From IMG/VR virus record IMGVR_UViG_3300043446_004613, positions 124,001 through 188,000 of that record: a DNA stretch of 64,000 bases. One strand, 5' to 3'. This document shows positions 45 to 53,611 of this stretch, in pieces. Every line of letters begins with the position of its first letter. Positions within the stretch are counted from its first letter, which is position 1. The notes under the pieces are model-generated. The model did not search any database and was not told the DNA's origin. It saw only the letters and a list, made by a program, of their open reading frames with translations. The translations under genes and the position numbers were made by a program.

Positions 45-980
45 TTGACATCTAATTTTATGCGTAGCCTAATTGCAATCAAAACCTATCGCCGACTCCA
101 CGCCCTCAAAGCTATGATGTCGGGCATCGAACAACACTGTCCGCAGTATCACTGCATTATCAGCGAAGACTGCGGTCAGCGTGATGGAACGACAGATTTC
201 ATTACTAAAGGCCGTGTCGGCACAGCTGTGCCGGAACTGCTGTCGACAAAGCATGTCGTTGAAAGCGGCGACGCTAACTTCATTAACGCAGATGTATACA
301 CTGGAGACGTAAATCTGGGTGTTACAGGCAACAACAACCGTTTGCTCAAGCTGTTCATGGATGGCGAGTGGGATCACCTGCTGCTGTGCGATGACGATTT
401 GCTCGTGACGGGTGATTTCGTTGAAGCATACGCGAACGCCCATGCAGACCTTGGTGTGGACATGTTTTGCTTCTGCGACTTCACTGAAGCATCTCCAGCC
501 ATATCCGGTGCCCCGGAAACGTATAAATGGACTACTTATCCGATGCGCGGTTATCAAGTAAAGTTTCTACCCCGCTTCACCGGCATCATGATGTCGGTAA
601 CACGCAGCCTCATTGAAAAGATAGGCTACATGGATGCCGAGTTCGGCAAGTTTGGAGAAGAACACTGCGACTGGACAATTCGTGCGCGTATGGCAGGCGG
701 CATACGTCTGAACAACACGGATATGAATTGTTTGGACATCGCCCATAACCGCCTGACCCATCAAAACGTACAGACCAGTATGTCAGGTTCAGCGCGTAAG
801 CACGCTGATCAAGAAGCCCACGTCGCTATGCAGCGGGCTGCCTATGAATACCGTTTGCGTCACTATTACCGGCCCTTCCGTCTTACCTATCCAGTGATGG
901 CGGCAGGCCATTCCGGTGTCGGCGTGCCCTGCCGCCAGCTGGATCAGATCGGCTATAGACTCGTGAACGCCCCTGCGTAG
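45..980 (+). CDS. glycosyltransferase family 2-like protein
   Basis: N-terminal LIAIKTYRR/IISEDCG, DxD motif (LLCDDD), C-terminal GYMDAEFGKFGEEHCDW typical of GT2; the real start may be ATG at 60. Confidence 0.7.
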   Translation: MTSNFMRSLIAIKTYRRLHALKAMMSGIEQHCPQYHCIISEDCGQRDGTTDFITKGRVGTAVPELLSTKHVVESGDANFINADVYTGDVNLGVTGNNNRLLKLFMDGEWDHLLLCDDDLLVTGDFVEAYANAHADLGVDMFCFCDFTEASPAISGAPETYKWTTYPMRGYQVKFLPRFTGIMMSVTRSLIEKIGYMDAEFGKFGEEHCDWTIRARMAGGIRLNNTDMNCLDIAHNRLTHQNVQTSMSGSARKHADQEAHVAMQRAAYEYRLRHYYRPFRLTYPVMAAGHSGVGVPCRQLDQIGYRLVNAPA

Positions 981-5215: not shown

Positions 5216-6679
5216 ATGGTAATTCTCACTGAAAGTGGAAGACCGGTATTGGCGTCTGATGGCGGGCACATCTCCCGTTTCATGGACGTCTTGGAGTGGG
5301 GCTATCGCCTCGCTGAAACATCGTTGGGCATCCCTGAAAAGAACTCACGCGGCCTTTGGGAAGCGCGGGGCTGGAAGGAATTTGTCCAACACATGCCTGA
5401 GCACAAGCGTCCTTTGGCCGCAATCATGCTCGAAAACTGCCGCAGCCGTTTTGGCCGCCTCGATGAAGTGACTCGTACCACGTCACTCGGCACGTTCGAT
5501 AAATGGATTTTCCCCATTATCGCCAACATGTCCGAGAACGACGTGATCGACCAGCTTGTCGCGCTCCAGCCGATGGCAGGCCCGGTGAGCCAGATCGTCT
5601 ACATGGACATCGTCACTGGCCGTCGCAAAGGCCGTACTCCCGCAGGTGCCCCGATGTGGCGTGCCTTGCAGGGCGCGGTTGACCGCGACGACGACGGCGA
5701 TGAAGTCGTTCAGGACGAAACCGGCACTGCGTCGAGCGGTGGCGTGTTCATCCTCGAATGGACGCCTATCCGTCCCGGTACCGTCACAGGTTCCTACAGC
5801 ACCGTGAACTTTGCTGACGACGGCAACGGTCAGATCATCAACGTAGCCACCAACGCCGCGATCGGTACAGTCGTGTACCAAGGCACTGGCGCTGGCACCG
5901 TGACGATCGCCGGGGCAGCCAACACGGACTACTCCGTGACCTACGCGTTCAATTCTGAAGGCAACCTCGCCATTCAGGATTACGAAATGAAGCTTTCCAG
6001 CACTCCGGTGACTGCGAAAGTGATGAAGCTCAAGACCCTGTGGTCTGAGGAAGCCGACCAGAACCTTCAGGCGATGTACAACATCAAGGCCGAAAGCGTT
6101 CTGCTCAACGCGCTCACCAACGCCCTCCAGTATCAGAAACACCGCCAAGTGATCTTCGATCTCCGCGCCAAAGCTGATGCCGGTTTCGTTGTCTGGGATG
6201 CGATCGCTCCGTCTGGTGTCAACTACCAGACCCACAAGTTCAGCATCATCGACGCGTTCGAGACTGCATCGAACTTCATCTACGGCGCTACGAACATGGT
6301 TGCCGGTAACTGGTTGCTGCTTGGCCTCCAAGCCGCTACCGTGGTTGCCACGCTGCCGCAGTTCGTGCCGAAGAACAACCGCGTGCAGATGCAGGGTATC
6401 ACCTACATCGGCGATCTTGGCAACAAGAAGGTCTTCGCTGACCCGCACTATCCGACTAACGAGTTCCTCGTCGGTCACAAGGGTGACCAGTTCCTGACCA
6501 CCGGCTACGTGTTGGCCGAATATCAGAAGCTGTACACCACCCCTGACGTGGTGCTGCCGGACTTCATCCATCAACGTGGCTTTGCGACGAGCTTCGCCCG
6601 GAAGATGGTTAACAGCAAGATGTACTGCCGTGGCCTCGTTCAGAATAGTCCAACGGCGTTCGGCCAAACGATTGGCTAA
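5216..6679 (+). CDS. major capsid protein (T4 gp23-like)
   Basis: DQLVALQPMAGPVSQIVYM motif, KLKTLWSEEADQNLQAMYNI segment, strongly biased codons, position after protease/scaffold, own terminator. Confidence 0.92.
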   Translation: MVILTESGRPVLASDGGHISRFMDVLEWGYRLAETSLGIPEKNSRGLWEARGWKEFVQHMPEHKRPLAAIMLENCRSRFGRLDEVTRTTSLGTFDKWIFPIIANMSENDVIDQLVALQPMAGPVSQIVYMDIVTGRRKGRTPAGAPMWRALQGAVDRDDDGDEVVQDETGTASSGGVFILEWTPIRPGTVTGSYSTVNFADDGNGQIINVATNAAIGTVVYQGTGAGTVTIAGAANTDYSVTYAFNSEGNLAIQDYEMKLSSTPVTAKVMKLKTLWSEEADQNLQAMYNIKAESVLLNALTNALQYQKHRQVIFDLRAKADAGFVVWDAIAPSGVNYQTHKFSIIDAFETASNFIYGATNMVAGNWLLLGLQAATVVATLPQFVPKNNRVQMQGITYIGDLGNKKVFADPHYPTNEFLVGHKGDQFLTTGYVLAEYQKLYTTPDVVLPDFIHQRGFATSFARKMVNSKMYCRGLVQNSPTAFGQTIG

Positions 6680-10068: not shown

Positions 10069-10145
10069 GTATAAGCGCACACAGGCTTGTCGACATGCTG
10101 GATAAGATTAGAGCCGATGAAGCCAGCGCCGCCTGTGATCAATAA
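10065..10145 (+). pseudogene. 5' stub of a phage gene interrupted by the rml insert
   Basis: ATGA-coupled start, MSISAHRLVDMLD motif like neighbouring phage proteins, then runs into antisense rmlB sequence and stops. Confidence 0.55.
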
Positions 10146-10151
10146 ATTCAT
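10090..10151 (-). pseudogene. rmlB: 5' fragment of dTDP-glucose 4,6-dehydratase
   Basis: MNLLITGGAGFIGSNLIQH is the RmlB Rossmann start; similarity ends after about 20 codons. Confidence 0.8.
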
Positions 10152-10166
10152 AGTGACAGTTGAAGA

Positions 10167-11114
10167 TTATTCCGGCTTCCAGTTTTTCAACGAGTGTTCG
10201 AGCGCTTCTTCTACGCTACGAACTTTGATACCTGTAGATTTCAATTTAGAAACATCCATGATGCAATTGGAGCGCGGCGTCTTAGCGGCGACTTTGTAAA
10301 ACTCATCGTCATTCGCCCAGAACTCAAATTTCCGCGCGGGCTTCAGGTGCTTTTCAATGAGTGCTACAACGTGCCGCGTGGTGACATAGCCTTCATTGGT
10401 GAGGTTGTAAACGCCGAACGGGGCGCGGCGTTCCCATAAATCCAGACAGATGCTCGCGAACTCGGCGCGGTGCGAAATGGAATTTACGTTTTCGTAAGCC
10501 TTCACATAACGCTGCACTTTGCTCAAGTAATTGCGTTTATTGTCAAATTCATCGAACGGAATCCGCAATCGCCAGACGTAGCTCTGACCAATACCTGCCA
10601 TCGCTTCCTCACCCAGCGCCTTGGTGCCGCTATAAAAACTACACGGCTGGTCGCGAAAGGAAAAATTCGGAGTATCGTTTTCGGTGAAACCGAAAATAGA
10701 GGAGGATTTCTGCTCAGCCAAAGCATGCAGGTACGACTTAGTCATATCCTTCTCCACACGCATCTTTCCGTTCTCCAAAATTTTGGCTCCGCTGTAGATG
10801 CAACCAGAAGAGACGTGTCCCCACGGAATTCCCGCCGCCGCACACGCGTGAGCGATGGTCTGGGGTAGCAGCGTATTCCCGACCAGCGTGCCAGCCTTGT
10901 CCAACTCGCAGGCATCCACATTCGGTTTTCCGGTGTAACCCGCGCAGTTAGCCACAAACTCTGGCTTTTTGGCTCGCAAAAATTCCAGCAATAAATCAAA
11001 GCGGGAATAATCCACCTGACTACGCGAAAGGGTGATGAACTCTTTTTTACGACGGCGTAATTCCGTAACGAATGCTTCGCCGATATAGCCAGTGGCTCCG
11101 AGAAGTAGAATCAT
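10167..11114 (-). CDS. rmlD: NAD(P)-dependent nucleotide-sugar epimerase/reductase (RmlD family, NRS/ER-like)
   Basis: GATGYIG, CAGYTGKPNVDACE, HVSSGCIY and FYSGTK (YxxxK) motifs; lies between rmlA and rmlB fragments. Confidence 0.85.
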   Translation of the reverse strand: MILLLGATGYIGEAFVTELRRRKKEFITLSRSQVDYSRFDLLLEFLRAKKPEFVANCAGYTGKPNVDACELDKAGTLVGNTLLPQTIAHACAAAGIPWGHVSSGCIYSGAKILENGKMRVEKDMTKSYLHALAEQKSSSIFGFTENDTPNFSFRDQPCSFYSGTKALGEEAMAGIGQSYVWRLRIPFDEFDNKRNYLSKVQRYVKAYENVNSISHRAEFASICLDLWERRAPFGVYNLTNEGYVTTRHVVALIEKHLKPARKFEFWANDDEFYKVAAKTPRSNCIMDVSKLKSTGIKVRSVEEALEHSLKNWKPE

Positions 11115-11120
11115 TTTTTT

Positions 11121-11322
11121 TTATTGCAGACGTTTGGCTTCGGCGATGACCTCTGTTTCCAGATAAGCGCGATATTCGCAATTTGGCATCAGGCTTACGA
11201 TTTTTTTCTAACTGAGTCAGCGTAACGATACCCGAGCGGAACGCTGCTTCTTCGGGACAGCCAATCTTGATGCCCGCGCGTTTTTCAATCGTCTGCACAT
11301 ACGCGCTCGCATCATGCAGGCT
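11121..11322 (-). pseudogene. rmlA: 3' fragment of glucose-1-phosphate thymidylyltransferase with a +1 frameshift
   Basis: SLHDASAYVQTIEKRAGIKIGCPEEAAF matches the RmlA C-terminus; removing one A from the 7-nt run near 11201-11207 restores LEKIVSLMPNCEYRAYLE...KRLQ*. Confidence 0.85.
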
Positions 11323-37213: not shown

Positions 37214-37232
37214 TCTCTATTGTAGTTACAGC

Positions 37233-38066
37233 ATGGCGCGTCAGATCGACATAAGCACACAAGTAAATCTCTGGGGCAAGGCGACCGACCAAACGGTTGG
37301 ACTTGTACCTCAGCGAAGCGACTTGTTTTACGTTGACTTCAGAAACGCTGTGCGGGGTATAAACGCCACAGGCGCTTCACCGCGCCCTATCGACCCGGCC
37401 AGCATCCTGCCGCAATTTGTACGATCCACCACCTTACCAGAGAACAGACTAAAACCAGAAACTGTACGCCGGGATAGTGTGCCATACAACATGCCCTCGT
37501 GGGACGATCCGCTCGATCCGGTAAAAGTGGTGTTTTTAATGAGTAATTCTGACGATGTCAGTAAAAACGACCTTATATCCGTACTGGATACGTGGTTGAA
37601 ACTGACACGTGCCGGTCGTGGTTCTCGTCAGGATGGATACGGTAATTCTGGATACGTACTGTTGAACAGCAACTACTCAATCGACTATACGTTCGACGTG
37701 AGTATTCACCTACTGCGCGGTACACTGCTCAATGCTTCCAATACAGCAGCTAACACCTCAAATGCAAGAGTCATGGCTGTAAACAACGAGATTCAGCGGC
37801 ACCGTCGAAAAGCAAAAGGCTTGGCGCAAATGGGTAAACCCATACCAAAATCGATACAGAAGCAGCTTGCGTCATCACCCGGCGCAGTTAACAACATTGT
37901 CGAAACCGGCATGACTATCGATGCTACGTGGATCATGTACAACGCATGGATCGGCGGCTACAAGCTTTCTGACCTGAACACCGCAGAAACCGGGCTGGTC
38001 ACGGTTGAGGCCACGTTCTATACAGAAGCGTTTGAGCGCAACGATGCTCTGAGCAATCAACTATGA
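37233..38066 (+). CDS. tail-tube-like baseplate protein (gp54/gp19 paralog)
   Basis: VRSTTLP, DPVKVVF and YKLSDLN...TVEATFY tube-fold pattern. Confidence 0.55.
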   Translation: MARQIDISTQVNLWGKATDQTVGLVPQRSDLFYVDFRNAVRGINATGASPRPIDPASILPQFVRSTTLPENRLKPETVRRDSVPYNMPSWDDPLDPVKVVFLMSNSDDVSKNDLISVLDTWLKLTRAGRGSRQDGYGNSGYVLLNSNYSIDYTFDVSIHLLRGTLLNASNTAANTSNARVMAVNNEIQRHRRKAKGLAQMGKPIPKSIQKQLASSPGAVNNIVETGMTIDATWIMYNAWIGGYKLSDLNTAETGLVTVEATFYTEAFERNDALSNQL

Positions 38067-39232
38067 ATCTATCCACGCCGACGCTTAACGCGCTTGCCAA
38101 GTTAAGACCGCCGTTCGCACGGTCGGCTACTTTCTTATACCCGTTCACAAACGAAGGCTTGGTAAACCCCGGAATCACTGTGCAGATGCCTGCCGGTGAG
38201 CCGGTCGTTGCCGCAGGTGCTGGAACGGTCGTTGATGTATACAGGCAGCTTCCGATCTACCAAGTTTCCGACAATACGCTGCTAAAAGCGGTGGTTTACT
38301 ACGTGGTCATTGCCCACGGCGGACTGGTGTTCACTACCGTCGCAGGTCTTTCTGGCGTGAACGTCGTTAAAGGTTCGACTGTTCAGCGCGGCCAGCGCAT
38401 CGGCACGATGTCTAGTGACAATCTGTTTGTAGCGGCTCAAATCGACAACAAGGCGATAAATCCGCTGACATTAAATAAGCACTGGGCAATCCAGAACTCG
38501 GCGTTTGTCGTCGGTCAGGGAAATAAGATTCGATTCGCTCCTGATCAACTGCTGCGCGATTTGAGTAATGGCATCGTGGTGTTCCTGCATAACGGTATAA
38601 AATATTTCAAGCAAGCAGTCGCGCCTACACCTTTTCTGGTCAATATTGCGTTTAATGGCGACGGTACAAAGACCGGGAGCGCAGCTACTGGCATCACCGC
38701 TGATGACTACTGGAACGATTATCTGCCTGAAGACTTTCAAGCACTTGTAGACTCTGCATGCTATTACCCTTACCTAGGTTCATTTGGGATACAAGCATAC
38801 GACTTCACTGCACAGCCGGTGCTCCACCTGAGCGATTACGCAGGTAATCGCAATCAGGTACTGCTTGAGCGCGTTGCTCCGATGCTTTCGGCAGCAAATA
38901 GCGGTTTGAGTTGGGATGCTATGCTTGCCCGCTGGATTGGTGGTTATCTCGGGCCAGTACCCTACGAAAATATCTTTCGCCTGCGTAACGTTCCACCGGG
39001 AACGTATACACTTTACCTGTACGCTAATGCAGGAACGCTTGGCAGCGCCAGCACGTTTTACGTGTCAATCAACAGCGGTACGCCGACAGTATTGACCAAC
39101 AATCCTGTGCTGACACCCGCTTTCATCGAACACTACAACTACGTAAAAATTGATGTTACGCTTGCACGCAACGACGCCCTCACAATCAAGACAATCGGTT
39201 ATCTGTCAGGATTGCAGCTTCAGCGGATTTAG
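38063..39232 (+). CDS. degenerate M23/LytM-like domain plus beta-sandwich domain, probably virion-associated
   Basis: GEPVVAAGAGTV...VVIAH...VVKGSTVQRGQRIG matches the M23 fold but the HxxxD and HxH ligands are missing. Confidence 0.55.
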   Translation: MNLSTPTLNALAKLRPPFARSATFLYPFTNEGLVNPGITVQMPAGEPVVAAGAGTVVDVYRQLPIYQVSDNTLLKAVVYYVVIAHGGLVFTTVAGLSGVNVVKGSTVQRGQRIGTMSSDNLFVAAQIDNKAINPLTLNKHWAIQNSAFVVGQGNKIRFAPDQLLRDLSNGIVVFLHNGIKYFKQAVAPTPFLVNIAFNGDGTKTGSAATGITADDYWNDYLPEDFQALVDSACYYPYLGSFGIQAYDFTAQPVLHLSDYAGNRNQVLLERVAPMLSAANSGLSWDAMLARWIGGYLGPVPYENIFRLRNVPPGTYTLYLYANAGTLGSASTFYVSINSGTPTVLTNNPVLTPAFIEHYNYVKIDVTLARNDALTIKTIGYLSGLQLQRI

Positions 39233-39813
39233 ACCGTAGCGCCGATGTCAATCAGGCTGCCTTGGCTACGATCATGGAAAAACGGTGACGGAAAAATCAC
39301 CGCACTATTGAACTTGCGCCAAAAATAAAGATCATCAGGGAACCCGTCGAATTCTACCGAGCGAAAGCGCAGCGCCGCTTCTGGTGTTATCCAGTATGCC
39401 ATGCAGCAGCCGTTTATGCCGGACGATTTATCATTCGTGTAAAGGCCGTAACCGAATCCAAGATCAGCAACCTTACTGTACGCATTTACATCGAATTCGC
39501 GCCCGTGGAGGCTGATAAAATCGAATCGGTAGAGGTGGGAAAAAGCCTCAAGCGCTATCCTTTGCCAGTGGTTACTGATAGGCACGGCATCGTCTTCAAA
39601 AACCAAGGCCGGGCCAACGGCTTCCGCTAGAGCGTCTTGGTGCCCGCGAAAAGCCCGCAGGTGACCTACCTTGTTTGGCACGATATTGTGCTGGTCGACC
39701 CACCCATCCGGCAGTTCGTAGTCAGCGCAGAAATGCTGGTTGTAGTTCAAGCCGCGCAGGTGCGGCAAAATAAGCGCTTTGCGCTTTGTGTTTGCGACAA
39801 CGATTATGTTCAT
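39229..39813 (-). CDS. glycosyltransferase family 25-like
   Basis: GHLRAFRGH, ALVFEDDA and AYWITPEAA motifs. Confidence 0.7.
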   Translation of the reverse strand: MNIIVVANTKRKALILPHLRGLNYNQHFCADYELPDGWVDQHNIVPNKVGHLRAFRGHQDALAEAVGPALVFEDDAVPISNHWQRIALEAFSHLYRFDFISLHGREFDVNAYSKVADLGFGYGLYTNDKSSGINGCCMAYWITPEAALRFRSVEFDGFPDDLYFWRKFNSAVIFPSPFFHDRSQGSLIDIGATV

Positions 39814-40817
39814 GACCAGATACCTGCTTCACGGAGTGCTGGCACAACGTGCTCTTCCATGTATACACTGTTAATGTAGCGCCTTGCTTGCACACAGCCT
39901 GCAACATAGATTCGATACAGGTTTGCGTGGAGCGCCTGCTCAATTTTGTCTACAGCAGCTTTGACATCTATCCAGTGCGGAGGATTGCGATTGGGCCGCG
40001 TAAGGTTGGGTAAAACCACGCAGTTAACGCCATCTGTCCAAGGGTACGTAAAATCCACGGGAGACTCTTGCATAGCCATGACGCTATTAAAACTGGCTTC
40101 AGCATGGCGAAAACATTTCCAAGACGCACCCCGTAGGCATAGCGACAACTTGGCCTTGCTTTGATACGCCATCAAAGTGTCCAAAGGTATACGGCGGTAA
40201 TGCGGTGTATACAGAATCGCTGTTTGGCGCTTATGCCCTTTTGCAAAAGCGTAGTCCAAGTCCTCAAGCGACGTACACAGACCATTGCACAGCTTTCTTT
40301 TAACAAGTTCAGCGTGTAAAAGCGGACGATCACACGAGCTAAAGCCGTATGAGTAGAATATGTCAATCGGACGTGCGTTAAATGCCTCTTCAGTATCCGG
40401 CTCGTGTGGAGAAAAAGTACTCGTAAAGTCGATAACCTTGAGCGGGAACGCTGTTGTTGGAACAGTGCGCTTGGAGAATTCGCGCTTAAAGTAAAGCTTC
40501 ACTGCTGGGGCAAGATCAGCACAAGGCTTGTAGGCGCTCAACTTGCCGGGCCAGTTAAAGCTGTTGGTCAGAATTATTTGATAATCGTTTTCGCACTCAA
40601 GGTAGTCAAACACGACAACGGGTTTACCTGACAGCAGCACAGCTTTTACAGTTTCCGGGTCACACACGTATTCAGGGTGCCATGTCCAAAGGTAAAAAAC
40701 GACGTCGGCCTCGTTCAAAGAGGTGACAAACTCTGAGTCGCGTAAACCTTTTACACGATCAAGCACGAAGCCATCGACTTCGACGTTGCCGCATGTTGTG
40801 GAGTAGACTTTCACCAT
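39810..40817 (-). CDS. GT-B glycosyltransferase (exostosin/GT47-like)
   Basis: LYFKRE, RPIDIF and SKAKLSLCLRG...CFRHAE motifs. Confidence 0.6.
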   Translation of the reverse strand: MVKVYSTTCGNVEVDGFVLDRVKGLRDSEFVTSLNEADVVFYLWTWHPEYVCDPETVKAVLLSGKPVVVFDYLECENDYQIILTNSFNWPGKLSAYKPCADLAPAVKLYFKREFSKRTVPTTAFPLKVIDFTSTFSPHEPDTEEAFNARPIDIFYSYGFSSCDRPLLHAELVKRKLCNGLCTSLEDLDYAFAKGHKRQTAILYTPHYRRIPLDTLMAYQSKAKLSLCLRGASWKCFRHAEASFNSVMAMQESPVDFTYPWTDGVNCVVLPNLTRPNRNPPHWIDVKAAVDKIEQALHANLYRIYVAGCVQARRYINSVYMEEHVVPALREAGIWS

Positions 40818-41461
40818 TGGCCTTCTCCAACAAAGTTATAGGCGACATCTTCCGATATTCCGTTTACACCGCTGCCGTATATTCCGATGTGCTGTGCTAG
40901 TGAGTGCTTGGTGGCAATCTTGCGCTCAAACACCTTACTGATGCAATGATCCCAGTTATGAACCCACCAGCTGACGGGCATCTCATCAAACACGCACTGG
41001 GCTGTAGCACGATCGACGAATTGAATTGCACCGCCTACGCCATCCACCACCACCCAATCTTCGTGCTCTTCGTAGACCTTCTGCGTAACAGAGCGGTATC
41101 CGGTGAGCACCGTTCGGCGGTGCGGGTCTTTTGTGACCTCCCACAGCTGGCGTAGGCGATAATCGAACTGAGCGCCAAGGAGCAGATCGTTGTCCATCGC
41201 TAACAGGTAACGATACTGCTCAGGCGAACTCAAAAAAGCTTTGTAGCGGTTGTACGCTGCCATACCGACACCCACATGTTCGACATGCTGCTGCACTGGC
41301 CAGTCCCAGCGGGACAGAAAATCTACGCCGTACTTTTCGCTCTTGTCGTCGATGATCAAGACGTCGCTGGCAGCGCTTTTGTTGCGCTTTAAGCTGTCCA
41401 ACGTAATTCCTGTCAGATCGCGGCGATTCCACGTAGACACGATGATGAGGATGTCTTTCAT
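40811..41461 (-). CDS. glycosyltransferase family 2
   Basis: IIVSTWNR, LIIDDKS and MDND (DxD) motifs. Confidence 0.78.
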   Translation of the reverse strand: MKDILIIVSTWNRRDLTGITLDSLKRNKSAASDVLIIDDKSEKYGVDFLSRWDWPVQQHVEHVGVGMAAYNRYKAFLSSPEQYRYLLAMDNDLLLGAQFDYRLRQLWEVTKDPHRRTVLTGYRSVTQKVYEEHEDWVVVDGVGGAIQFVDRATAQCVFDEMPVSWWVHNWDHCISKVFERKIATKHSLAQHIGIYGSGVNGISEDVAYNFVGEGQW

Positions 41462-42336
41462 GCCATGATGCGGAAATGTGTCCGCGTATTGTCTTCCTCA
41501 AAGATGTCGAGCTTGGTCTGGCTATAGGAGCGCTGCCACGATTCTTCAGTTGTGTTCTCGCCCGTCTGTCCAACGTGCCACGCACGGTTAACAAGAGCTA
41601 CCGCATGAGAAAATCCAGCTAGACGCAAGGCCAGCGCCATAGCCCCGTCTTGACTTGATACAGGGCGTGACGTGAAGTACTCCTTGGCTGGCCAATGAAC
41701 CGGAAACGGTCGATTGCCGCAATGGACAGGCAGGCGCTCAGCAATACCACGCATCCAGTCGCCGATGCGGGCGATGTCGCGATCTTTGTAGGGGCACTGG
41801 AGGAAGCGCTGGACATATTCTTGCATCCACGGACGGGTTAAAATCCAGCACTCGCGGCTCATCATGTGATTACACAAGCTATAGCCGCAGTCCGATACCA
41901 GTCCGAGACTGGCTTGCTTTTCTTCCAGCGGCATGTTGCAGAATACGGCTGTGCTGACAACACACTCGTTGCTGTAGTTGGCTTTTATCCAAGCCATCAT
42001 GTTCTGCAACAAAGTCATCAAGTGCGGAGACATGCGGATGTCGTCCTCGACGTAAAATACCCGGTCAAACTTGCACTCTTCAAACAGATAGCGTTTAGCC
42101 TCGTACACGTTTCGACCGATACCGTAGTGCTCTGGGCGCATCAGCAGGTGCAACCCCGGAATCTTTGCCCGTATAGCGATGGCTGCGTTTTCATACTGGG
42201 CAGCGTCAGGGCCTCCGTCGCACGCCAGAACGACCGGCATGCCCATGCGTACCTGCGGAAATGCCAGCACGTCTTGCAGCACTTGAGCAAGCATGCCGGG
42301 TCGGTTATAGCACGGTATTAAAATAGCGGTCTTCAC
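41458..42336 (-). CDS. glycosyltransferase, GT-A fold (GT2-like)
   Basis: ILIPCYNRP, LACDG, GIGRNV and YVEDD motifs. Confidence 0.75.
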   Translation of the reverse strand: MKTAILIPCYNRPGMLAQVLQDVLAFPQVRMGMPVVLACDGGPDAAQYENAAIAIRAKIPGLHLLMRPEHYGIGRNVYEAKRYLFEECKFDRVFYVEDDIRMSPHLMTLLQNMMAWIKANYSNECVVSTAVFCNMPLEEKQASLGLVSDCGYSLCNHMMSRECWILTRPWMQEYVQRFLQCPYKDRDIARIGDWMRGIAERLPVHCGNRPFPVHWPAKEYFTSRPVSSQDGAMALALRLAGFSHAVALVNRAWHVGQTGENTTEESWQRSYSQTKLDIFEEDNTRTHFRIMA

Positions 42337-44057
42337 GCGACAACGGTAGAACGTTTCACCGCAAAGAACCGAATTTCCTCGCCGTTACCGGATGCCCATA
42401 CTTTTTCGATCTCTGCATCAATCTCTTCGGTCTTCATGACGCGGTTTTCGCGCTCTTGGATTAAACGGCGCAGTTCGTTTAAGTCGTAATCGCCTGTATG
42501 CGTGTACACACGGAGTACGTCAAAACCGAACTTCTCAAGCGTCGCTTTCAAAGTTGCCGGACTGTAGTGGACATAGTGCGTGTTGACGTCCAGCCATTGC
42601 CATTTTTCTTTGCGCTGTTCGCTACAATACGATTCGATGTTAGGAACGATACCGGCGAAAATGCCTCCTACTTTTAAGAGTTTGCACACACGGCTTAAAA
42701 CCTCAGCTGGCTTGGAAAGGTGCTCGAACGTGTGGATAGCGACAATCACGTCAAGGCTGTCGGCATCAATCGCACAATCCAGCAGTTCGTCGCAGGTGGT
42801 AGGTATGCCGAGCACAGAGTTGCTAAAATTGGCCGCCTTGTAGCAAACGTCGATACCCTGCGGCGTGAATCCCTTCTCGCGAGCATTTACCATGAAGGCA
42901 CCCCAGCCGCAGCCAATGTCCAGCATCTTACCGGGCGGTTTGGCGAATTCCATAAGCTGCTGCATGAAGTAGTCACGACGCAGTCCGCTCGTACGGATGT
43001 CGTCAAAATTCTTCGGCAGGCGCATGTGTGAGTGGTCATCGGCGTACTGCTGATAATAGAGCATCGTCTGCTCATGATCCGGGTGCGTGCGCAGATACAC
43101 GAGATTGCAGCTTGGGCACTTTACGATGTCAGTCTGCGCTCGATGCTGCGGAGCGTTGGCGGCATCTGCGTCGCAGATGGGACATTTTGTTAACACGGTA
43201 TTCATAGATTTTTTGTATAGTTTTGGTATATGAACAATAGCGCTTTCGCCGTAAATCGCGTTGCGCCGGTTGAAAATGCAGTTCGGGCCTTCGAGCCACA
43301 CTTCGAGCATGCTGTCGTGCTTCAAGCCTTCACAGATGGCGTAAGGCAGCGACTGGTTTCCAATGTACAAGCGGCAACCCGCTATGAGACGCGCAAGTTC
43401 AAGGAAGTCTTTTGTCGGCAAATACGTCAAATAACCCCAGTCAGCAACGAACGCGTTGTACTCGCTAGGCAATCCGACAAAGGCCGCTCTTTTGCCGTGA
43501 CGCTCCATGATCTTCGCCCACGGAAAATCAGAATTACGCCAACGCGGGCTGCGGTGGATAAGAACTGGATAGTCATTTAGCTCAGTGGGAGTGTCGATCG
43601 TAAGCCACGCGGATTGACAGGCATCTAGCGGCACTTTGAACGTGTATAGATGAGCTTCCGCTAGGTTGAGTCGCCGTGCGCCTTCCGCCATTTTGGTGTG
43701 CTCCGTCAGCAGGTATTCACGGAACTGGTTCAAGTCGATGTCGATTTCAGGGGCTTTTTCTACAAAGCTCAGTTCGTGGATATACGGTTGCATTTCCAGC
43801 AGAGGTCGCATTACTTCTACATGCTCTGCTGTCATCGACAAACGTGTCTTGTGTTGAACACTTGGGCCGATAAACAAGCTGCCGCCGCCCATCGCTTTTA
43901 TGGTCGGCAGCGCGTAAATGATGTCGCCAAAGTCACCGCTATGGAAAAACGAAAGACGGTGCTTCAGTGGAATGACGACGCTTCTTTCGGCAGACACGGG
44001 ATCAAAGTGTTCTGCTTTTAGCTTTTTAGCGATGTATTCAAACGATTTCACTAGCAA
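42333..44057 (-). CDS. fusion of a GT9-like glycosyltransferase and a Zn-binding class I methyltransferase
   Basis: HSGDFGDIIYALP and LIAGCRLYIGNQS (GT9-like); CPIC...CPSC, LDIGCGWG, HTFEH (methyltransferase). Confidence 0.75.
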   Translation of the reverse strand: MLVKSFEYIAKKLKAEHFDPVSAERSVVIPLKHRLSFFHSGDFGDIIYALPTIKAMGGGSLFIGPSVQHKTRLSMTAEHVEVMRPLLEMQPYIHELSFVEKAPEIDIDLNQFREYLLTEHTKMAEGARRLNLAEAHLYTFKVPLDACQSAWLTIDTPTELNDYPVLIHRSPRWRNSDFPWAKIMERHGKRAAFVGLPSEYNAFVADWGYLTYLPTKDFLELARLIAGCRLYIGNQSLPYAICEGLKHDSMLEVWLEGPNCIFNRRNAIYGESAIVHIPKLYKKSMNTVLTKCPICDADAANAPQHRAQTDIVKCPSCNLVYLRTHPDHEQTMLYYQQYADDHSHMRLPKNFDDIRTSGLRRDYFMQQLMEFAKPPGKMLDIGCGWGAFMVNAREKGFTPQGIDVCYKAANFSNSVLGIPTTCDELLDCAIDADSLDVIVAIHTFEHLSKPAEVLSRVCKLLKVGGIFAGIVPNIESYCSEQRKEKWQWLDVNTHYVHYSPATLKATLEKFGFDVLRVYTHTGDYDLNELRRLIQERENRVMKTEEIDAEIEKVWASGNGEEIRFFAVKRSTVVA

Positions 44058-44598
44058 AACGGGTTACGTAATGAGCCGCACTGTCGATTTCTGTCACGAT
44101 CTCGAACTGTTTCCTGAACTCCACAGGGTTTTCTGTAAAGCTCGCTGGAAAGAACCGGTAAAATCCCCAGCAATCACGATGACCTTCTACGATCACAAGC
44201 TTTCTGTCTTTTAACGCATAGACCCGCTGTTGGCGCAGTAAAGTGATCGAGTTCTTGGCCCGTTTGTCCATGTGTGCCCGGATATAGGCTGGATCGTAAA
44301 CAGCATCAGGTAGCCAGTTGAAGCACCATTCACCGATGGCATTATCGCGGCAAAGCTGAAGCATTGCCGGTACGGATTGGCGGCTGAGTTGAATCTCCAG
44401 AAAGTTAGGCCACCGCTTAAACCAAGGCTTGAGCTTGCTATTGGTCGTATTGTATACAACCATCTGCTTATTCGGCCAGTCTTGGTTGTAAAATGAAGCG
44501 ATGCTTGCTCTCGCGGCGGTTAGCTGCTGGGGACGGGTAAACGCCATGAGTCCCGATGCGATCGGGTATTCAATCCAACTGGTGTCGTTCTCAGGCAC
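44038..44598 (-). CDS. degenerate GT2-like protein
   Basis: TRPQQL...SF.NQDWPNKQMVVYN and GEWCFNW.PDAVY pattern, but no intact DxD. Confidence 0.45.
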   Translation of the reverse strand: MPENDTSWIEYPIASGLMAFTRPQQLTAARASIASFYNQDWPNKQMVVYNTTNSKLKPWFKRWPNFLEIQLSRQSVPAMLQLCRDNAIGEWCFNWLPDAVYDPAYIRAHMDKRAKNSITLLRQQRVYALKDRKLVIVEGHRDCWGFYRFFPASFTENPVEFRKQFEIVTEIDSAAHYVTRFASEIV

Positions 44599-44618
44599 AC
44601 GACAAAGAACGGTTTTTG

Positions 44619-44810
44619 TCAGTTGGATACTGGCGTGATCGGTGGCATCTGCTGCGGCATGCCTTGCGTCTGGTTTTGCGCAGCCATGCGTTGGGCTAGT
44701 TCGACACCGAAACCGACCTGATGGCTACGGTCAATCGTAGGCAGCTGGCTGTCCGAAGCAGGTGCGGTGTACTTTTGTGCCGTATCAATGAATTTGTTAA
44801 TATCGTTCAC
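44619..44810 (-). CDS. small hypothetical protein
   Basis: 63 aa from GTG, GTTCTTA 5 nt upstream. Confidence 0.45.
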   Translation of the reverse strand: MNDINKFIDTAQKYTAPASDSQLPTIDRSHQVGFGVELAQRMAAQNQTQGMPQQMPPITPVSN

Positions 44811-44830: not shown

Positions 44831-45889
44831 ATGATCGGGCCGGTACTAAAGCAGGAAATTGAGAATACGTTCATCGTGGTGCGCGAAAAGTGTACCACCC
44901 TCGAATTGGTATTCTGCTGCCCCGAGTGCGGCGATAAGACAGGCCATCGCAGCGTAAACCTCAAGTCCGGCAAGACTTTCTGCTGGAAATGCAACAAGGG
45001 CAAGAATAACAAAGGGAACTTTGTTGCGTGGGCGCGGGCGCTCGGTTTCCATTTTACGGCAGATACAGGGGCGAATAACGTTCCGGTTGAACAACTGCTT
45101 TATGCTGAAGATCAGCAGGAATCGGTTGTTCCCGTTATCCAAGAGGTGAAGCTGCCTGAAGGTTTTACACCAATCGCCCGGACACCCAAGAGCGTATACA
45201 CTAAGTTGATAACCAAGATGGCTGCACGTAAAAACCTAGACTACGCTGCATTTGCTGAAGCAGGAGCCGGTTATACCCCAGCCCACCCAAAATGGGAGCC
45301 TTTCTGCATTTTTCCGGTGCAAGAGTACGGTTTGACGGTCTACTACCAAGGGCGCACTTATGTAGACGTGCCGGGGGAGACAACCAAGAAATTTCCAAGT
45401 CGGAACGAGGTAACTTTTGGTGCTGGTAACTGGGTGTACAACATCGATACCGTTCGTGAGCAACAGCCGGAAATTGTTGTCATCGTGGAATCCATATTGA
45501 ACGTGCTGTCGTTGCGCAAAAAGCTTCGGCAGCTTGGCTGGAAAAATATCGTTCCTGTCTGTGTTTTTAAGCACCACCTAAGCCAAGTACAAGCACTTAA
45601 ACTACTGCGTTGCCAAGGTGTTCAAGAGTTCTGCATGCTGTTTGACCACGATGCGATCGATAAAACGTGGCAGAGTGTCAGCGCGATTGCGAACAAGAAG
45701 GTCGTGACGATCGCTGAGATGCCGTTATTAGACGGCAATAAGAAATGCGATCCAAACGACGATGTGGACGCCGCGATAAACGCAATCGAAAATCGTCAGC
45801 TGTATACAGCTTCGAGCTTCAGCCGTAAAATGCTGGAGGCAGATGATCCGAGAATTTTTAGTATCACATCACGAAATATCTGTTCTTAG
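44831..45889 (+). CDS. DNA primase (zinc finger plus Toprim)
   Basis: CPECGD...CWKC zinc finger, VIVESILN and LFDHDA (DxD) Toprim motifs. Confidence 0.8.
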   Translation: MIGPVLKQEIENTFIVVREKCTTLELVFCCPECGDKTGHRSVNLKSGKTFCWKCNKGKNNKGNFVAWARALGFHFTADTGANNVPVEQLLYAEDQQESVVPVIQEVKLPEGFTPIARTPKSVYTKLITKMAARKNLDYAAFAEAGAGYTPAHPKWEPFCIFPVQEYGLTVYYQGRTYVDVPGETTKKFPSRNEVTFGAGNWVYNIDTVREQQPEIVVIVESILNVLSLRKKLRQLGWKNIVPVCVFKHHLSQVQALKLLRCQGVQEFCMLFDHDAIDKTWQSVSAIANKKVVTIAEMPLLDGNKKCDPNDDVDAAINAIENRQLYTASSFSRKMLEADDPRIFSITSRNICS

Positions 45890-46551: not shown

Positions 46552-46758
46552 ATGGTTTGGGGAAAGACGTCCTTGCGGATGTCGAAAGCGCAGTTTCGTA
46601 GGCAGTGCCCTGAGTGCGGTCGGCGCGAAATTTGGGTACCGGCGCGGGGAGCCGCGAAAGGTTACTGGTCAGTTGTTGATCTTCACAATCTCGAACAGCG
46701 AAGCCCAGAATGGCTTGCTTCGCATTTGATGTCTTGGATAACAGGCGACCGTAGTTAA
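46552..46758 (+). CDS. small hypothetical protein
   Basis: 68 aa with CPECG. Confidence 0.35.
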   Translation: MVWGKTSLRMSKAQFRRQCPECGRREIWVPARGAAKGYWSVVDLHNLEQRSPEWLASHLMSWITGDRS

Positions 46759-46761
46759 TGC

Positions 46762-53559: not shown

Positions 53560-53611
53560 ACCTCTAAGAACAGCATTTTGAGAATTTTCTGTTCTCGTAG
53601 TTAAAGATATT

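What the first reader, a model, noticed from the sequence alone, without database searches (positions are those of the whole stretch)
39229..44598. Six consecutive overlapping GT genes with a GT9-methyltransferase fusion
A 5.4-kb minus-strand run in which every gene overlaps the next, headed by a GTTCTTT motif; each enzyme appears to be of a different family or subfamily, as in an O-antigen or LOS locus, yet no flippase, polymerase or priming transferase is seen. The absence of membrane components favours a cytoplasmic acceptor such as assembling virion proteins.
Basis: partly seen in the sequence, partly recalled or inferred. Interest (0 to 1): 0.6.

Follow-up and report, generated by a model that had tools for sequence, protein, structure and literature searches.

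The report
Variable glycan-building island in jumbo phage
An uncultured freshwater giant phage carries six tightly packed sugar-transferase-like genes, one fused to a methyl-adding enzyme, and the set changes from one related phage to the next; the phage therefore builds its own methylated sugar chain, but whether on its own particle or on the host's outer-membrane lipid is unresolved.

Summary
Six minus-strand ORFs (39229-44598) overlap head to tail. Five are credible glycosyltransferases: p1 is GT25-like, p2 has a GT-B fold, p3 and p4 are GT2, and the N-terminal half of p5 is a GT-B closest to GT9 structures. p5 also carries a zinc ribbon and a class I SAM methyltransferase. The sixth, p6, is a divergent GT2-like protein. 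It is predicted to dock on the N-terminal tail of p5 and is fused to GT9 domains in a sister clade.

The window lies in a 211-kb, about 93% complete, T4-like jumbo phage from freshwater. No ORF in the genome has more than 3 predicted membrane helices. There is no WbaP/WecA-type priming transferase, no route to hydroxymethyl-pyrimidine DNA and no integrase.

In every sequenced relative the slot between the M23 tail-lysin-like gene and the primase holds a glycan cassette. Its content varies (3 to about 9 genes), with p5 as the conserved core. The phage also encodes an L-rhamnose-forming epimerase/reductase and two more GTs beside the head genes.

The acceptor is unresolved. I favour virion proteins (0.4). 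However, cellular relatives of the core enzyme sit beside MsbA-type exporters in LPS-core-like loci of Bacteroidota, so remodelling of host lipid-linked glycan is a close rival (0.3). This is a new variant of a known kind.

The parts
44038..44598 (-). p6: 186-aa divergent GT2-like protein, first gene of the cassette. Predicted partner of the p5 N-terminal tail. Catalytic competence uncertain.
   Evidence: ORF. Orthologues in L004, L006, L019, L021 and L025 at 37-49% identity. 11 of 24 family members give weak PF00535 hits. Atlas feature score 0.95 to viral GT2 clusters. Fused N-terminally to GT9 domains in the L029 clade. Complex prediction ipSAE 0.73 against a best control of 0.07.
43968..44057 (-). 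p5 residues 1-30: N-terminal tail predicted to dock on p6
   Evidence: Interface residues 1-30 of chain 1. This segment has low confidence in the monomer model.
43203..43970 (-). p5 residues about 30-285: GT-B domain closest to GT9 structures (heptosyltransferase-like fold); donor sugar unknown
43107..43184 (-). p5 residues 292-317: CxxC...CxxC zinc-ribbon linker that travels with the methyltransferase module
   Evidence: Sequence. Stand-alone viral methyltransferase homologues (L002, L003, L020) align from residue about 287-291 onward. Weak zinc-finger hits.
42510..42962 (-). p5 residues 366-516: class I SAM-dependent methyltransferase domain
   Evidence: PF13489 Methyltransf_23 at E=5.8e-22. 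PDB methyltransferases 3cc8 and 3dli.
41458..42336 (-). p4: GT2-type GT-A glycosyltransferase (EDD motif)
   Evidence: PF13641 at 27.1 bits against a cut-off of 27. Orthologues at 47-71% in close relatives and 31% in L031.
40811..41461 (-). p3: GT2-type GT-A glycosyltransferase (DND motif)
   Evidence: PF00535 at 23.6 bits against a cut-off of 23.3. Orthologues at 65-67%.
39810..40817 (-). p2: GT-B fold glycosyltransferase of no assigned family
39229..39813 (-). p1: short GT25-like GT-A glycosyltransferase (EDD motif). Last gene; absent from some relatives.
   Evidence: Atlas structure TM 0.83 to a GT25 cluster. Pfam GT25 only E=0.16. Present in L021 and L004, absent in L019.
44604..44610 (-). 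GTTCTTT just upstream of the p6 start: one instance of a genome-wide gene-start motif
10167..11114 (-). Likely sugar-donor supply: NRS/ER (UGER)-like bifunctional 3,5-epimerase/4-reductase that makes NDP-L-rhamnose
   Evidence: PF04321 at E=1.4e-26. Best PDB hits are 4qqr (Arabidopsis 3,5-epimerase/4-reductase, E=5.6e-29) and 7jid (mimivirus UDP-L-rhamnose synthase, E=1.4e-13).
45..980 (+). Further glycosyltransferase (311 aa), first gene of the plus-strand run that leads to the prohead protease and major capsid protein
   Evidence: phrog_2456 glycosyltransferase at E=1.1e-21. Weak PF13641 hit. Its divergent neighbour at G000 122091-123626 is a 511-aa GT2.
38063..39232 (+). Flank: M23-peptidase protein (tail lysin-like). 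Conserved left border of the variable slot.
   Evidence: PF01551. Orthologues at 38-57% in all relatives.
44831..45889 (+). Flank: primase-like gene. Conserved right border of the variable slot, followed by a Cpn10-like gene.
   Evidence: phrog_47. Synteny.

Best explanation
The six genes are a translationally coupled, fully soluble glycan assembly line of a virulent, T4-like freshwater jumbo phage. The host is probably a member of the Bacteroidota.

Shown:
- Five credible glycosyltransferases of four fold/family types are present, plus a SAM methyltransferase fused to the GT9-like enzyme.
- The cassette occupies a fixed slot between the M23 tail-lysin-like gene and the primase in every sequenced relative.
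- Its gene content varies in the way an O-antigen/LOS locus does.
- p5 is the conserved core.

Supported by prediction:
- p6 (GT2-like) binds the N-terminal tail of p5. Together they form a GT-A/GT-B/methyltransferase unit, which exists as a single polypeptide in a sister clade.

Inferred:
- The p6-p5 unit lays down and methylates the conserved inner part of an oligosaccharide.
- p4, p3, p2 and the dispensable p1 extend it.
- Donors are host nucleotide sugars, plus NDP-L-rhamnose completed by the phage's own epimerase/reductase.
- The chain is built directly on an acceptor in the cytoplasm, without a polyprenol carrier, flippase or polymerase.

My leading guess for the acceptor is the phage's own structural proteins, giving a strain-variable glycan coat on the virion. 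Precedents are mycobacteriophage capsid and tail-tube glycosylation and the capsid glycans of chloroviruses.
For: - Anatomy and families.
- No membrane machinery anywhere in the genome: no ORF with more than 3 hydrophobic segments and none in the six proteins; no PF02397 or PF00953.
- No route to glycosylatable DNA bases: no thymidylate-synthase family, no C5 DNA methylase and no TET/JBP hit.
- No tyrosine integrase, so a lytic life style is likely. In lytic viruses the proven roles of multi-GT sets are virion or DNA glycosylation.
- Every relative with the slot sequenced carries a GT/methyltransferase cassette there. p5 is as conserved as, or more conserved than, the flanking structural genes: 46-68% against 38-57% for M23. 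That suggests a core function rather than an occasional moron.
- p6-p5 complex: ipSAE 0.73, 0.72 and 0.73 against a best control of 0.07. The mark was reached by 58 of 80 solved complexes and 2 of 110 mismatched pairs. Contacts agree at 77% or more, and partner pLDDT is 84 or more. Fusion of the two domains in L029 gives independent support.
- Further GTs sit at the head of the head-gene run, and a UGER-like rhamnose enzyme lies near the capsid gene.
- Precedents: PBCV-1 A064R is a GT-GT-methyltransferase protein that finishes the capsid glycan with methylated L-rhamnose; its GTs are soluble; mimivirus L780 is the UGER (PMC9614988).
- GT9 and GT25 both include protein-glycosylating members: TibC appears among the fold hits, and a viral GT25/PLOD-GT cluster appears.
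Against: - No direct evidence for any acceptor.
- The only cellular relatives of the core GT9-like domain lie in LPS-core-like loci of Bacteroidota next to MsbA-type exporters. The ancestral acceptor of the family is therefore probably lipid-linked.
- Closeness to structural genes may only reflect a hyperplastic region between modules.
- No obvious Ser/Thr-rich acceptor tail was found on the capsid or other large structural proteins.
- Large T4-like cyanophages carry similar GT-rich clusters that the literature ascribes, untested, to host surface modification (PMC12801897).
- p6 lacks the canonical Asp residues of GT2 nucleotide binding and may not be catalytic.
Confidence: 0.4

Rival explanations
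1. Host envelope remodelling. The soluble or peripheral enzymes extend or rewrite the host's lipid A-core (LOS/LPS core), or another host lipid-linked glycan, on the cytoplasmic face of the inner membrane. The host's own MsbA-type exporter and Lpt machinery then carry the product to the surface. This would change the receptor landscape: exclusion of superinfecting phages, less loss of progeny on debris, or altered grazing and recognition.
For: - GT9, GT25 and GT2 are the classic LOS/LPS-core families (established knowledge).
- Cellular homologues of the p5 N-domain are confined, in the scan made, to Bacteroidota: 307 loci were found, and the best 80 were mostly Mucilaginibacter and Dyadobacter, with a few Pedobacter and other Bacteroidota.
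- In 30 loci sampled, the two genes on each side are dominated by GT2 (25 of 118 ORFs), fused ABC exporters (ABC_membrane 22, ABC_tran 23), DUF5672 (14), GT1/GT4 (10) and true GT9 (5).
- DUF5672 and FkbM-type methyltransferases also occur in the phage cassettes.
- Such a pathway needs no phage-encoded membrane protein, so the genome-wide absence does not count against it.
- Cassette variability mirrors host surface-glycan variability.
- The cyanophage literature favours this reading for similar clusters.
Against: - Only the GT9-like domain has BLAST-level relatives in those bacterial loci. p1-p4 and p6 do not.
- No integrase was found. In a lytic infection without growth, newly made LPS only dilutes the old, so the benefit is doubtful.
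- To my knowledge, proven phage seroconversion systems belong to temperate phages and use one to three enzymes, often membrane ones.
- The cassette is universal in the lineage and p5 is highly conserved, which is unusual for a host-specific accessory function.
Confidence: 0.3
2. Phage DNA hypermodification. The transferases glycosylate modified bases in the phage genome to evade restriction, as in T-even phages and the TET-linked systems.
For: - The cassette abuts replication genes (primase).
- Multi-GT DNA glycosylation is documented in phages (preprint 10.1101/2023.12.21.572611, listed).
Against: - There is no thymidylate-synthase-type hydroxymethylase, no C5 DNA methyltransferase and no TET/JBP hit (the control genomes were also silent, so this item is weak).
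- Six transferases plus a Methyltransf_23 domain are far more than known DNA systems use.
- The p2 match list is a flat, generic GT-B list.
Confidence: 0.04
3. A soluble product or another cytoplasmic target. This could be a free methylated oligo- or polysaccharide (as in mycobacterial methylmannose polysaccharides), a small-molecule glycoside, or a host protein such as a translation factor or a defence protein.
For: - All enzymes are soluble.
- Methyltransferases are abundant and varied in the cassettes of relatives: TylF-type sugar O-methyltransferase, Methyltransf_21/24.
Against: - I know of no precedent in phages.
- Strain-level variability of the gene set is typical of exposed, selected glycans rather than of an internal metabolite.
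- The 7qsg match is within 1 Z unit of dozens of unrelated GT-B enzymes.
Confidence: 0.12

Closest known systems
Chlorovirus PBCV-1 capsid-glycan machinery (A064R: two rhamnosyltransferase domains plus a methyltransferase domain; A061L; A111/114R) and the mimivirus UDP-L-rhamnose pathway (R141/L780)
   Same: Virus-encoded, soluble, cytoplasmic GTs without a lipid carrier. A GT-GT-methyltransferase unit, here as the predicted p6:p5 complex and as a single chain in a sister clade. A virus-encoded bifunctional 3,5-epimerase/4-reductase for L-rhamnose. Multidomain and variable gene sets (PMC9614988).
   Different: Those are eukaryotic viruses. No sequence relationship was shown. The domains here are GT2-like plus GT9-like rather than GT-A plus a novel GT. 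The acceptor here is unknown. The phage lacks the 4,6-dehydratase; only a roughly 20-codon remnant remains.
Mycobacteriophage virion glycosylation operons (Freeman et al. 2023, as cited in PMC12619734 and PMC12801897; that paper is not held in the library)
   Same: Tailed-phage-encoded GT sets that modify capsid and tail-tube subunits in the cytoplasm. Gene content is variable between phages. The methyltransferase content of those operons is my recollection and was not checked.
   Different: Those hosts are Actinobacteria and the phages are siphoviruses. No homology was detected: tblastn of p1, p2, p4 and p5 found nothing in 50,697 GenBank phage records. The cassette here is larger and has a GT9-like core.
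LOS/LPS-core biosynthesis loci (WaaC/WaaF GT9, GT25 Lgt/Lic2A-type, GT2), including the Bacteroidota loci that hold the cellular homologues
   Same: The same fold families, sequential carrier-independent assembly by soluble or peripheral enzymes, and phase- or strain-variable outer extensions. The p5 N-domain is 31-35% identical to the Bacteroidota proteins.
   Different: Encoded by a lytic phage. There is no Kdo transferase or exporter in the phage. p5 fails the Pfam GT9 model. A low-confidence alignment (E 0.022) places Gln where WaaF has the Asp of its N-D-S motif. The fusion to a methyltransferase and the pairing with p6 were not looked for in the cellular loci.
GT-rich 'LPS / cell-wall modification' clusters of large T4-like cyanophages (P-SSM2, S-SCSM1, S-SCSM2R)
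   Same: Large T4-like myoviruses with many GTs (GT2, GT25 and others) and NDP-sugar epimerases or rhamnose enzymes. Function untested (PMC12801897).
   Different: No detectable homology by tblastn. A different host phylum is likely. Here there is a fixed slot with a conserved GT9-like-methyltransferase core and a defined pattern of cassette replacement.
Bacterial autotransporter heptosyltransferases (TibC/Aah, GT9)
   Different: TibC is tied with the lipid-acting WaaC and WaaF. The TibC iron-finger and dodecamer features were not examined. The Cys4 ribbon of p5 belongs to the methyltransferase module.

Membership tests
CAZy GT9 / Pfam PF01075 (p5 N-domain) | Matches the family HMM above the gathering score | tested here: not met
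   No PF01075 hit even at E<=10. A profile of 28 homologues finds no GT9 chain in PDB sequences. hhalign against E. coli WaaC and WaaF gives only E 0.0097 and 0.022. Sister-clade proteins do pass (L029 908-aa protein: 38 bits against 22), but hhalign did not link that region to p5 significantly.
CAZy GT9 / Pfam PF01075 (p5 N-domain) | Two-Rossmann GT-B fold closest to heptosyltransferase structures | tested here: met
CAZy GT9 / Pfam PF01075 (p5 N-domain) | Conserved Asp in the C-terminal (N/V)-D-(S/T)-G sugar-nucleotide motif and use of ADP-heptose | tested here: inconclusive
   A low-confidence hhalign alignment places the family's G-N-Q-S opposite N-D-S of WaaF, that is Gln for Asp (conserved columns). 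The donor cannot be read from sequence.
GT2 (PF00535 / PF13641): p3, p4 | HMM above the gathering score and a DxD-type motif | tested here: met
   p3: 23.6 against 23.3 bits. p4: 27.1 against 27 bits. DND and EDD motifs are visible. Both scores are marginal but are backed by orthologues.
GT2 (PF00535): p6 | HMM above the gathering score; nucleotide-binding Asp residues | tested here: inconclusive
   p6 itself has no hit. 11 of 24 relatives hit weakly, best E 8.6e-4. The L029 fusion hits at 21.4 bits, below the 23.3 cut-off. Profile-profile comparison with p4 is negative. The usual DD position reads N-x-T, and only one Asp of the DxD region is invariant.
GT25 (PF01755): p1 | HMM above the gathering score | tested here: not met
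   12.2 bits against a cut-off of 24, E=0.16.
GT25 (PF01755): p1 | Fold shared with GT25 family members | tested here: met
   The Atlas model of the identical sequence matches a bacterial GT25 cluster at TM 0.83 (187 residues aligned) and a viral GT25/PLOD-GT cluster at 0.78. Feature score 0.96. These are predicted models on both sides.
Wzx/Wzy- or ABC-dependent O-antigen/capsule locus | Priming phosphoglycosyl transferase, flippase or ABC exporter, and polymerase encoded with the GTs | tested here: not met
   No PF02397 or PF00953 hit in the genome. No ORF has more than 3 hydrophobic segments. The genome is about 93% complete by CheckV.
LOS/LPS-core type pathway (carrier-independent, on lipid A-core) | Soluble or peripheral GT9, GT25 and GT2 enzymes acting in sequence; acceptor is lipid A-Kdo | not testable with these tools
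   The enzyme set fits, and the cellular homologues sit in such loci. The acceptor cannot be determined computationally.
Phage virion-glycosylation systems (mycobacteriophage / chlorovirus type) | A glycan covalently attached to capsid or tail proteins by virus-encoded soluble GTs | not testable with these tools
   Soluble virus-encoded GTs and a methyltransferase are present. No virion data exist for this uncultured phage. No RNA or protein data were found.
Phage DNA glycosylation systems | A pathway that makes a hydroxymethylated (or otherwise glycosylatable) base | tested here: not met
   No PF00303, PF00145 or PF12851 hit in the genome. The PF12851 control was silent, so that item alone is weak.

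The most novel reading that the evidence does not exclude
A lineage of freshwater T4-like jumbo phages, probably of Bacteroidota, autonomously coats its own virion proteins with a methylated, rhamnose-containing oligosaccharide. The chain is built in the host cytoplasm by a heteromeric GT2-like/GT9-like/methyltransferase core enzyme. Its outer part is swapped between phage strains by cassette replacement at a fixed locus, so that virions have 'serotypes'. This would extend virion glycosylation from mycobacteriophages and giant viruses to phages of Gram-negative bacteria. It would also define a new protein-acting branch of the GT9 fold.
Probability: 0.35. Interest if true: 0.75.

Novelty: new variant of a known kind. 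Interest (0 to 1): 0.5.

Why it matters
Many large phages carry clusters of glycosyltransferases, and their purpose is almost never known. This island is unusually tractable:
- It sits at a fixed locus.
- It has a conserved core (p6 plus the GT9-like-methyltransferase p5) and a variable periphery across at least a dozen relatives.
- It needs no membrane machinery.
- It comes with a matching sugar-donor gene.

If the acceptor is the virion, phage particles in freshwater carry strain-variable glycan coats. That would affect adsorption, grazing, stability and any use of such phages. If the acceptor is host LPS core, lytic phages rewrite the host surface during infection. Either answer would explain a widespread class of 'auxiliary' phage genes. 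The p5 N-domain family (cellular members so far only in Bacteroidota) and the p2 family are uncharacterised glycosyltransferase families with good models.

Tried and rejected
- Megablast of the 5.4-kb region and tblastn of p5, p2, p1 and p4 against 50,697 GenBank phage records found nothing. No cultured relative of the cassette is available.
- Single-sequence and profile searches of PDB sequences for p5-N, p2 and p6 gave only chance-level hits.
- PHROGs recognised only the methyltransferase. NCBIfam gave nothing specific.
- hhalign of the p6 profile against the p4 profile was negative. hhalign of the p5-N profile against the L029 908-aa protein and against E. coli WaaC and WaaF was weak.
- The methyltransferase half resembles only generic class I enzymes. 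It gave no match to sugar C-methyltransferases with an N-terminal zinc domain, an idea I dropped.
- The small conserved ORF s63 (44619-44810) was considered as a seventh gene or carrier. I set it aside because in the L027/L029 clade it stays with the primase, on the strand opposite the cassette.
- A scan for Ser/Thr-rich acceptor tracts in structural proteins gave nothing convincing.
- Isoelectric points did not discriminate membrane-peripheral from soluble enzymes.
- The 'moraphage' paper (PMC12619734) reports four core GT groups in another aquatic jumbo lineage. I could not tell whether it is the same lineage.
- The 'atlas' fold library was not available. The genome of locus L005 is not held for the genome search. 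The full A1 alignment was too diverse for a collection scan.
- No RNA run holds the region.
- Only genetic code 11 was used.

Full report
WHAT THE WINDOW IS

The window is bases 124001-188000 of a single 211,113-bp contig, with 52% G+C and no N. IMG/VR holds it as a virus record that CheckV rates about 93% complete. It encodes:
- a T4-type portal and a Gp23-type major capsid protein at window 5216-6679;
- a prohead protease and a gp5/gp27-type baseplate hub;
- an M23-peptidase protein, a Cpn10-like protein and a primase.

The capsid protein is 30% identical or less to that of any GenBank phage. Runs holding the sequence are freshwater metagenomes. It is therefore an uncultured T4-like jumbo phage. 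No tyrosine integrase was found.

THE OBSERVATION

Six minus-strand ORFs lie exactly at 39229-44598, and each overlaps the next. I call them p6, p5, p4, p3, p2 and p1 in the order of transcription.

- p3 and p4 pass the Pfam GT2-type models, just above the cut-offs.
- p5 has a strong class I SAM methyltransferase domain at residues 366-516 (E 5.8e-22). A CxxC...CxxC ribbon precedes it at residues 292-317.
- The N-terminal 290 residues of p5, and all of p1, p2 and p6, have no significant Pfam, PHROG, NCBIfam or PDB-sequence match.

Structure prediction and family tallies resolve most of these.

At the sequence level, GT9 membership is not met. There is no PF01075 hit, and hhalign to E. coli WaaC and WaaF gives only E about 0.01-0.02. 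That low-confidence alignment puts Gln where WaaF has the Asp of its N-D-S motif. I therefore call the domain GT9-like in fold, with an unknown donor, and not a heptosyltransferase.

p1. The Atlas holds this exact sequence. Its model matches a GT25 cluster at TM 0.83 over 187 residues.

p6. This is the weakest case. A language-model search points to viral GT2 clusters (score 0.95). 11 of 24 family members give weak PF00535 hits and no other family recurs. However, the usual Asp residues are changed and a profile comparison with p4 is negative.

So five credible glycosyltransferases are present, plus one GT2-like protein of uncertain catalytic status and one methyltransferase. The enzymes fall into four family or fold types, not six.

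THE GTTCTTT MOTIF

The motif is there (44604-44610). In the window as a whole it occurs at chance frequency: 10 sites against 9.5 expected. Genome-wide, however, GTTCTT lies within 40 nt upstream of 19 of 266 ORF starts against 3.3 expected, peaking at -12 to -15. GTTCT is kept before the p6 orthologues of L004, L006 and L021. A second motif, GTAGTTA, precedes 34 ORFs at -11. Both sit where a Shine-Dalgarno sequence would, and no AGGAG-type signal is enriched. The motif is a general gene-start signal of this phage and not a mark of the cassette.

NO MEMBRANE MACHINERY

A hydropathy scan of all 266 ORFs of the genome finds none with more than three hydrophobic segments. It finds no such segment in the six proteins. 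Searches of the six frames for Bac_transf (WbaP/PglC type) and Glycos_transf_4 (WecA type) are negative, with positive controls.

COMPARATIVE ANATOMY

Homologues of the cassette proteins led to contigs of related phages. A scan with the flanking M23 protein gave nine more loci besides the phage's own contig. In all of them the order is hub, 277-aa protein, M23, [cassette], small ORF, primase, Cpn10. The cassette itself differs:

| Locus | Cassette content |
|---|---|
| L021 | the same six genes |
| L019 | five genes (no p1) |
| L004 | six genes plus an extra GT2 on the other strand; frameshifts split p5 and join p4-p3 |
| L025 | three genes (p6, p5, p4) |
| L006/L007 | p6, two tandem GT9-like genes without the methyltransferase, DUF5672, three methyltransferases and two unknowns |
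| L026-L030 | on the other strand: a 701-aa and a 908-aa protein in which a p6-like domain is fused to GT9 domains (the 908-aa protein passes PF01075, 38 bits against 22), a methyltransferase, a GT34-like protein and a GT2 |
| L031 | the p5 fusion, a p4-like gene, two unknowns and a TylF-type sugar O-methyltransferase |

p5 is 46-68% identical across these loci, against 38-57% for M23. Similar GT9-like/methyltransferase/GT2 sets occur in unrelated phage contigs, for example L008 beside an SU10-type adaptor gene and L020. This is a fixed-locus glycan island with variable content and a conserved core, present in every relative examined.

THE p6-p5 UNIT

p6 and the GT9 fold are one polypeptide in the sister clade. 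I therefore tested whether p6 binds the p5 N-domain. The complex model scored ipSAE 0.73, 0.72 and 0.73, against a best control of 0.07. That mark was reached by 58 of 80 solved complexes and 2 of 110 mismatched pairs; these counts hold only roughly, because my own alignments were used. Contacts agreed at 77% or more, and the partner pLDDT was 84 or more. The interface joins residues 1-30 of p5, a tail that is poorly ordered in the monomer model, to the C-terminus and two strands of p6. This is what a split of a once-continuous chain would give. The result supports binding but does not prove it.

SUGAR SUPPLY AND OTHER GTs

The genome encodes an intact 315-aa RmlD-family protein at window 10167-11114. 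Its best solved relatives are the bifunctional 3,5-epimerase/4-reductases that make NDP-L-rhamnose: Arabidopsis 4qqr (E 5.6e-29) and mimivirus L780/7jid (E 1.4e-13) (PMC9614988).

The gene is flanked by remnants of an rml operon: the last 55-70 codons or so of an rmlA-like gene and the first 18 codons or so of an rmlB-like gene. Other viral contigs keep all three genes intact. The phage would therefore depend on the host for the 4-keto-6-deoxy sugar.

Two further GT genes form a divergent pair at the start of the window. One of them heads the run that leads to the prohead protease and the capsid gene.

THE ACCEPTOR

DNA is unlikely. There is no hydroxymethylase of the thymidylate-synthase family, no C5 methylase and no TET/JBP hit.

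Two readings remain close.

For virion proteins:
- The phage is probably lytic (no integrase).
- The cassette is universal in the lineage, with a well-conserved core.
- The phage has its own rhamnose enzyme, and further GTs sit beside the head genes.
- The proven precedents for multi-GT sets in lytic viruses are the chlorovirus capsid glycans (including the GT-GT-methyltransferase protein A064R, PMC9614988) and the mycobacteriophage capsid and tail-tube glycans (cited in PMC12619734 and PMC12801897).

For a host lipid-linked acceptor:
- A scan of one genome per prokaryotic species found 307 loci encoding relatives of the GT9-like domain. The best 80 were all Bacteroidota, mostly Mucilaginibacter and Dyadobacter, with a few Pedobacter and others.
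- In 30 of these loci the two genes on either side are mostly GT2, fused ABC exporters of the MsbA type (about 22 of 30 loci), DUF5672, GT4 and true GT9 (first seen). That is an LPS-core-like setting.
- Such a pathway needs nothing from the phage but soluble transferases.
- On the other side, only the GT9-like domain has relatives in those loci.

The restriction of cellular relatives to Bacteroidota, together with the non-Shine-Dalgarno start signals, also suggests a Bacteroidota host. That is inference only.

VERDICT

It is a new variant of a known kind: GT-rich islands in large phages and giant viruses. Its new features are a fold-level GT9-like/methyltransferase core, a predicted heteromeric partner, and cassette replacement at a fixed slot. 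Which molecule is glycosylated is the open and experimentally approachable question.

My estimates are:
- virion or other phage protein: 0.40
- host LPS-core-type glycolipid: 0.30
- soluble or other cytoplasmic target: about 0.12
- DNA: about 0.04

The remainder is unassigned. No step had to be referred. Read laying, alternative genetic codes and the large representative-protein search were not used.

Noticed in passing
whole genome; e.g. window 37214-37232, 44599-44618, 46740-46761, 53590-53611: Two short motifs sit where a Shine-Dalgarno sequence would: GTAGTTA (34 ORFs, starting at -11) and GTTCT(T) (19 ORFs against 3.3 expected, at -12 to -15). No AGGAG-type signal is enriched. In the examples seen, GTAGTTA precedes many structural genes (portal, the 1102-aa protein, the 277-aa baseplate-region gene), while GTTCT precedes p6, p4 and s63. 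They may be unusual translation-start or timing signals, and they fit a host that makes little use of Shine-Dalgarno pairing.
   Followed up: partly
window 10098-10151 (-) and 11154-11322 (-), flanking 10167-11114 (-): The intact rhamnose epimerase/reductase gene is flanked by dead ends of an rml operon. These are the 3' end of an rmlA-like gene (55-68% identity to the last 55-70 codons or so of viral RmlA-like genes) and the first 18 codons or so of an rmlB-like dehydratase, inside an 85-aa ORF. Other viral contigs (L035-L038) keep rmlA-UGER-rmlB intact. At least 208 viral contigs encode relatives of the enzyme.
   Followed up: partly
G000:C1:122091-123626 (-) and window 45-980 (+): A divergent pair of further glycosyltransferase genes (511 aa GT2; 311 aa, phrog_2456). 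The second opens the plus-strand run that leads to the prohead protease (3484-5178) and the major capsid protein (5216-6679). The phage therefore has at least eight GT-like genes.
   Followed up: partly
window 44619-44810 (-): A conserved 63-aa ORF lies between the cassette and the primase. Its start is only 20 nt from the divergent primase start, across the palindrome GTTCTTAGAAC. It stays next to the primase even where the cassette is on the other strand.
   Followed up: partly
L004:9995-13229: In the 228-kb relative, the p5 fusion is split into 202-aa and 376-aa ORFs in different frames, and p4-p3 read as an 85-aa plus a 491-aa ORF. These are either assembly indels or real frameshifts and fusions.
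   Followed up: no
window 38063-39232 (+): The M23-peptidase protein that borders the cassette has a C-terminal domain with a weak match to a polysaccharide-lyase family 4 beta-sandwich (fn3_3, E 2.4e-4). This may be a carbohydrate-binding module on a tail lysin.
   Followed up: no
L020:4962-10996: An unrelated 61-kb phage contig carries a p2 homologue (37% identity) among three methyltransferases, a second p2-like gene and a GT_PLOD (collagen-type protein glycosyltransferase) domain protein, next to an RNA ligase. This may be another phage glycan set built from some of the same parts.
   Followed up: no
G000:C1:58797-59399 (+): A 200-aa protein has a hydrophobic N-terminus and a 30-residue stretch that is 60% Ser/Thr (an S/T/H/N-rich tract). 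It is the most Ser/Thr-rich segment in the genome, and its role is unknown.
   Followed up: no
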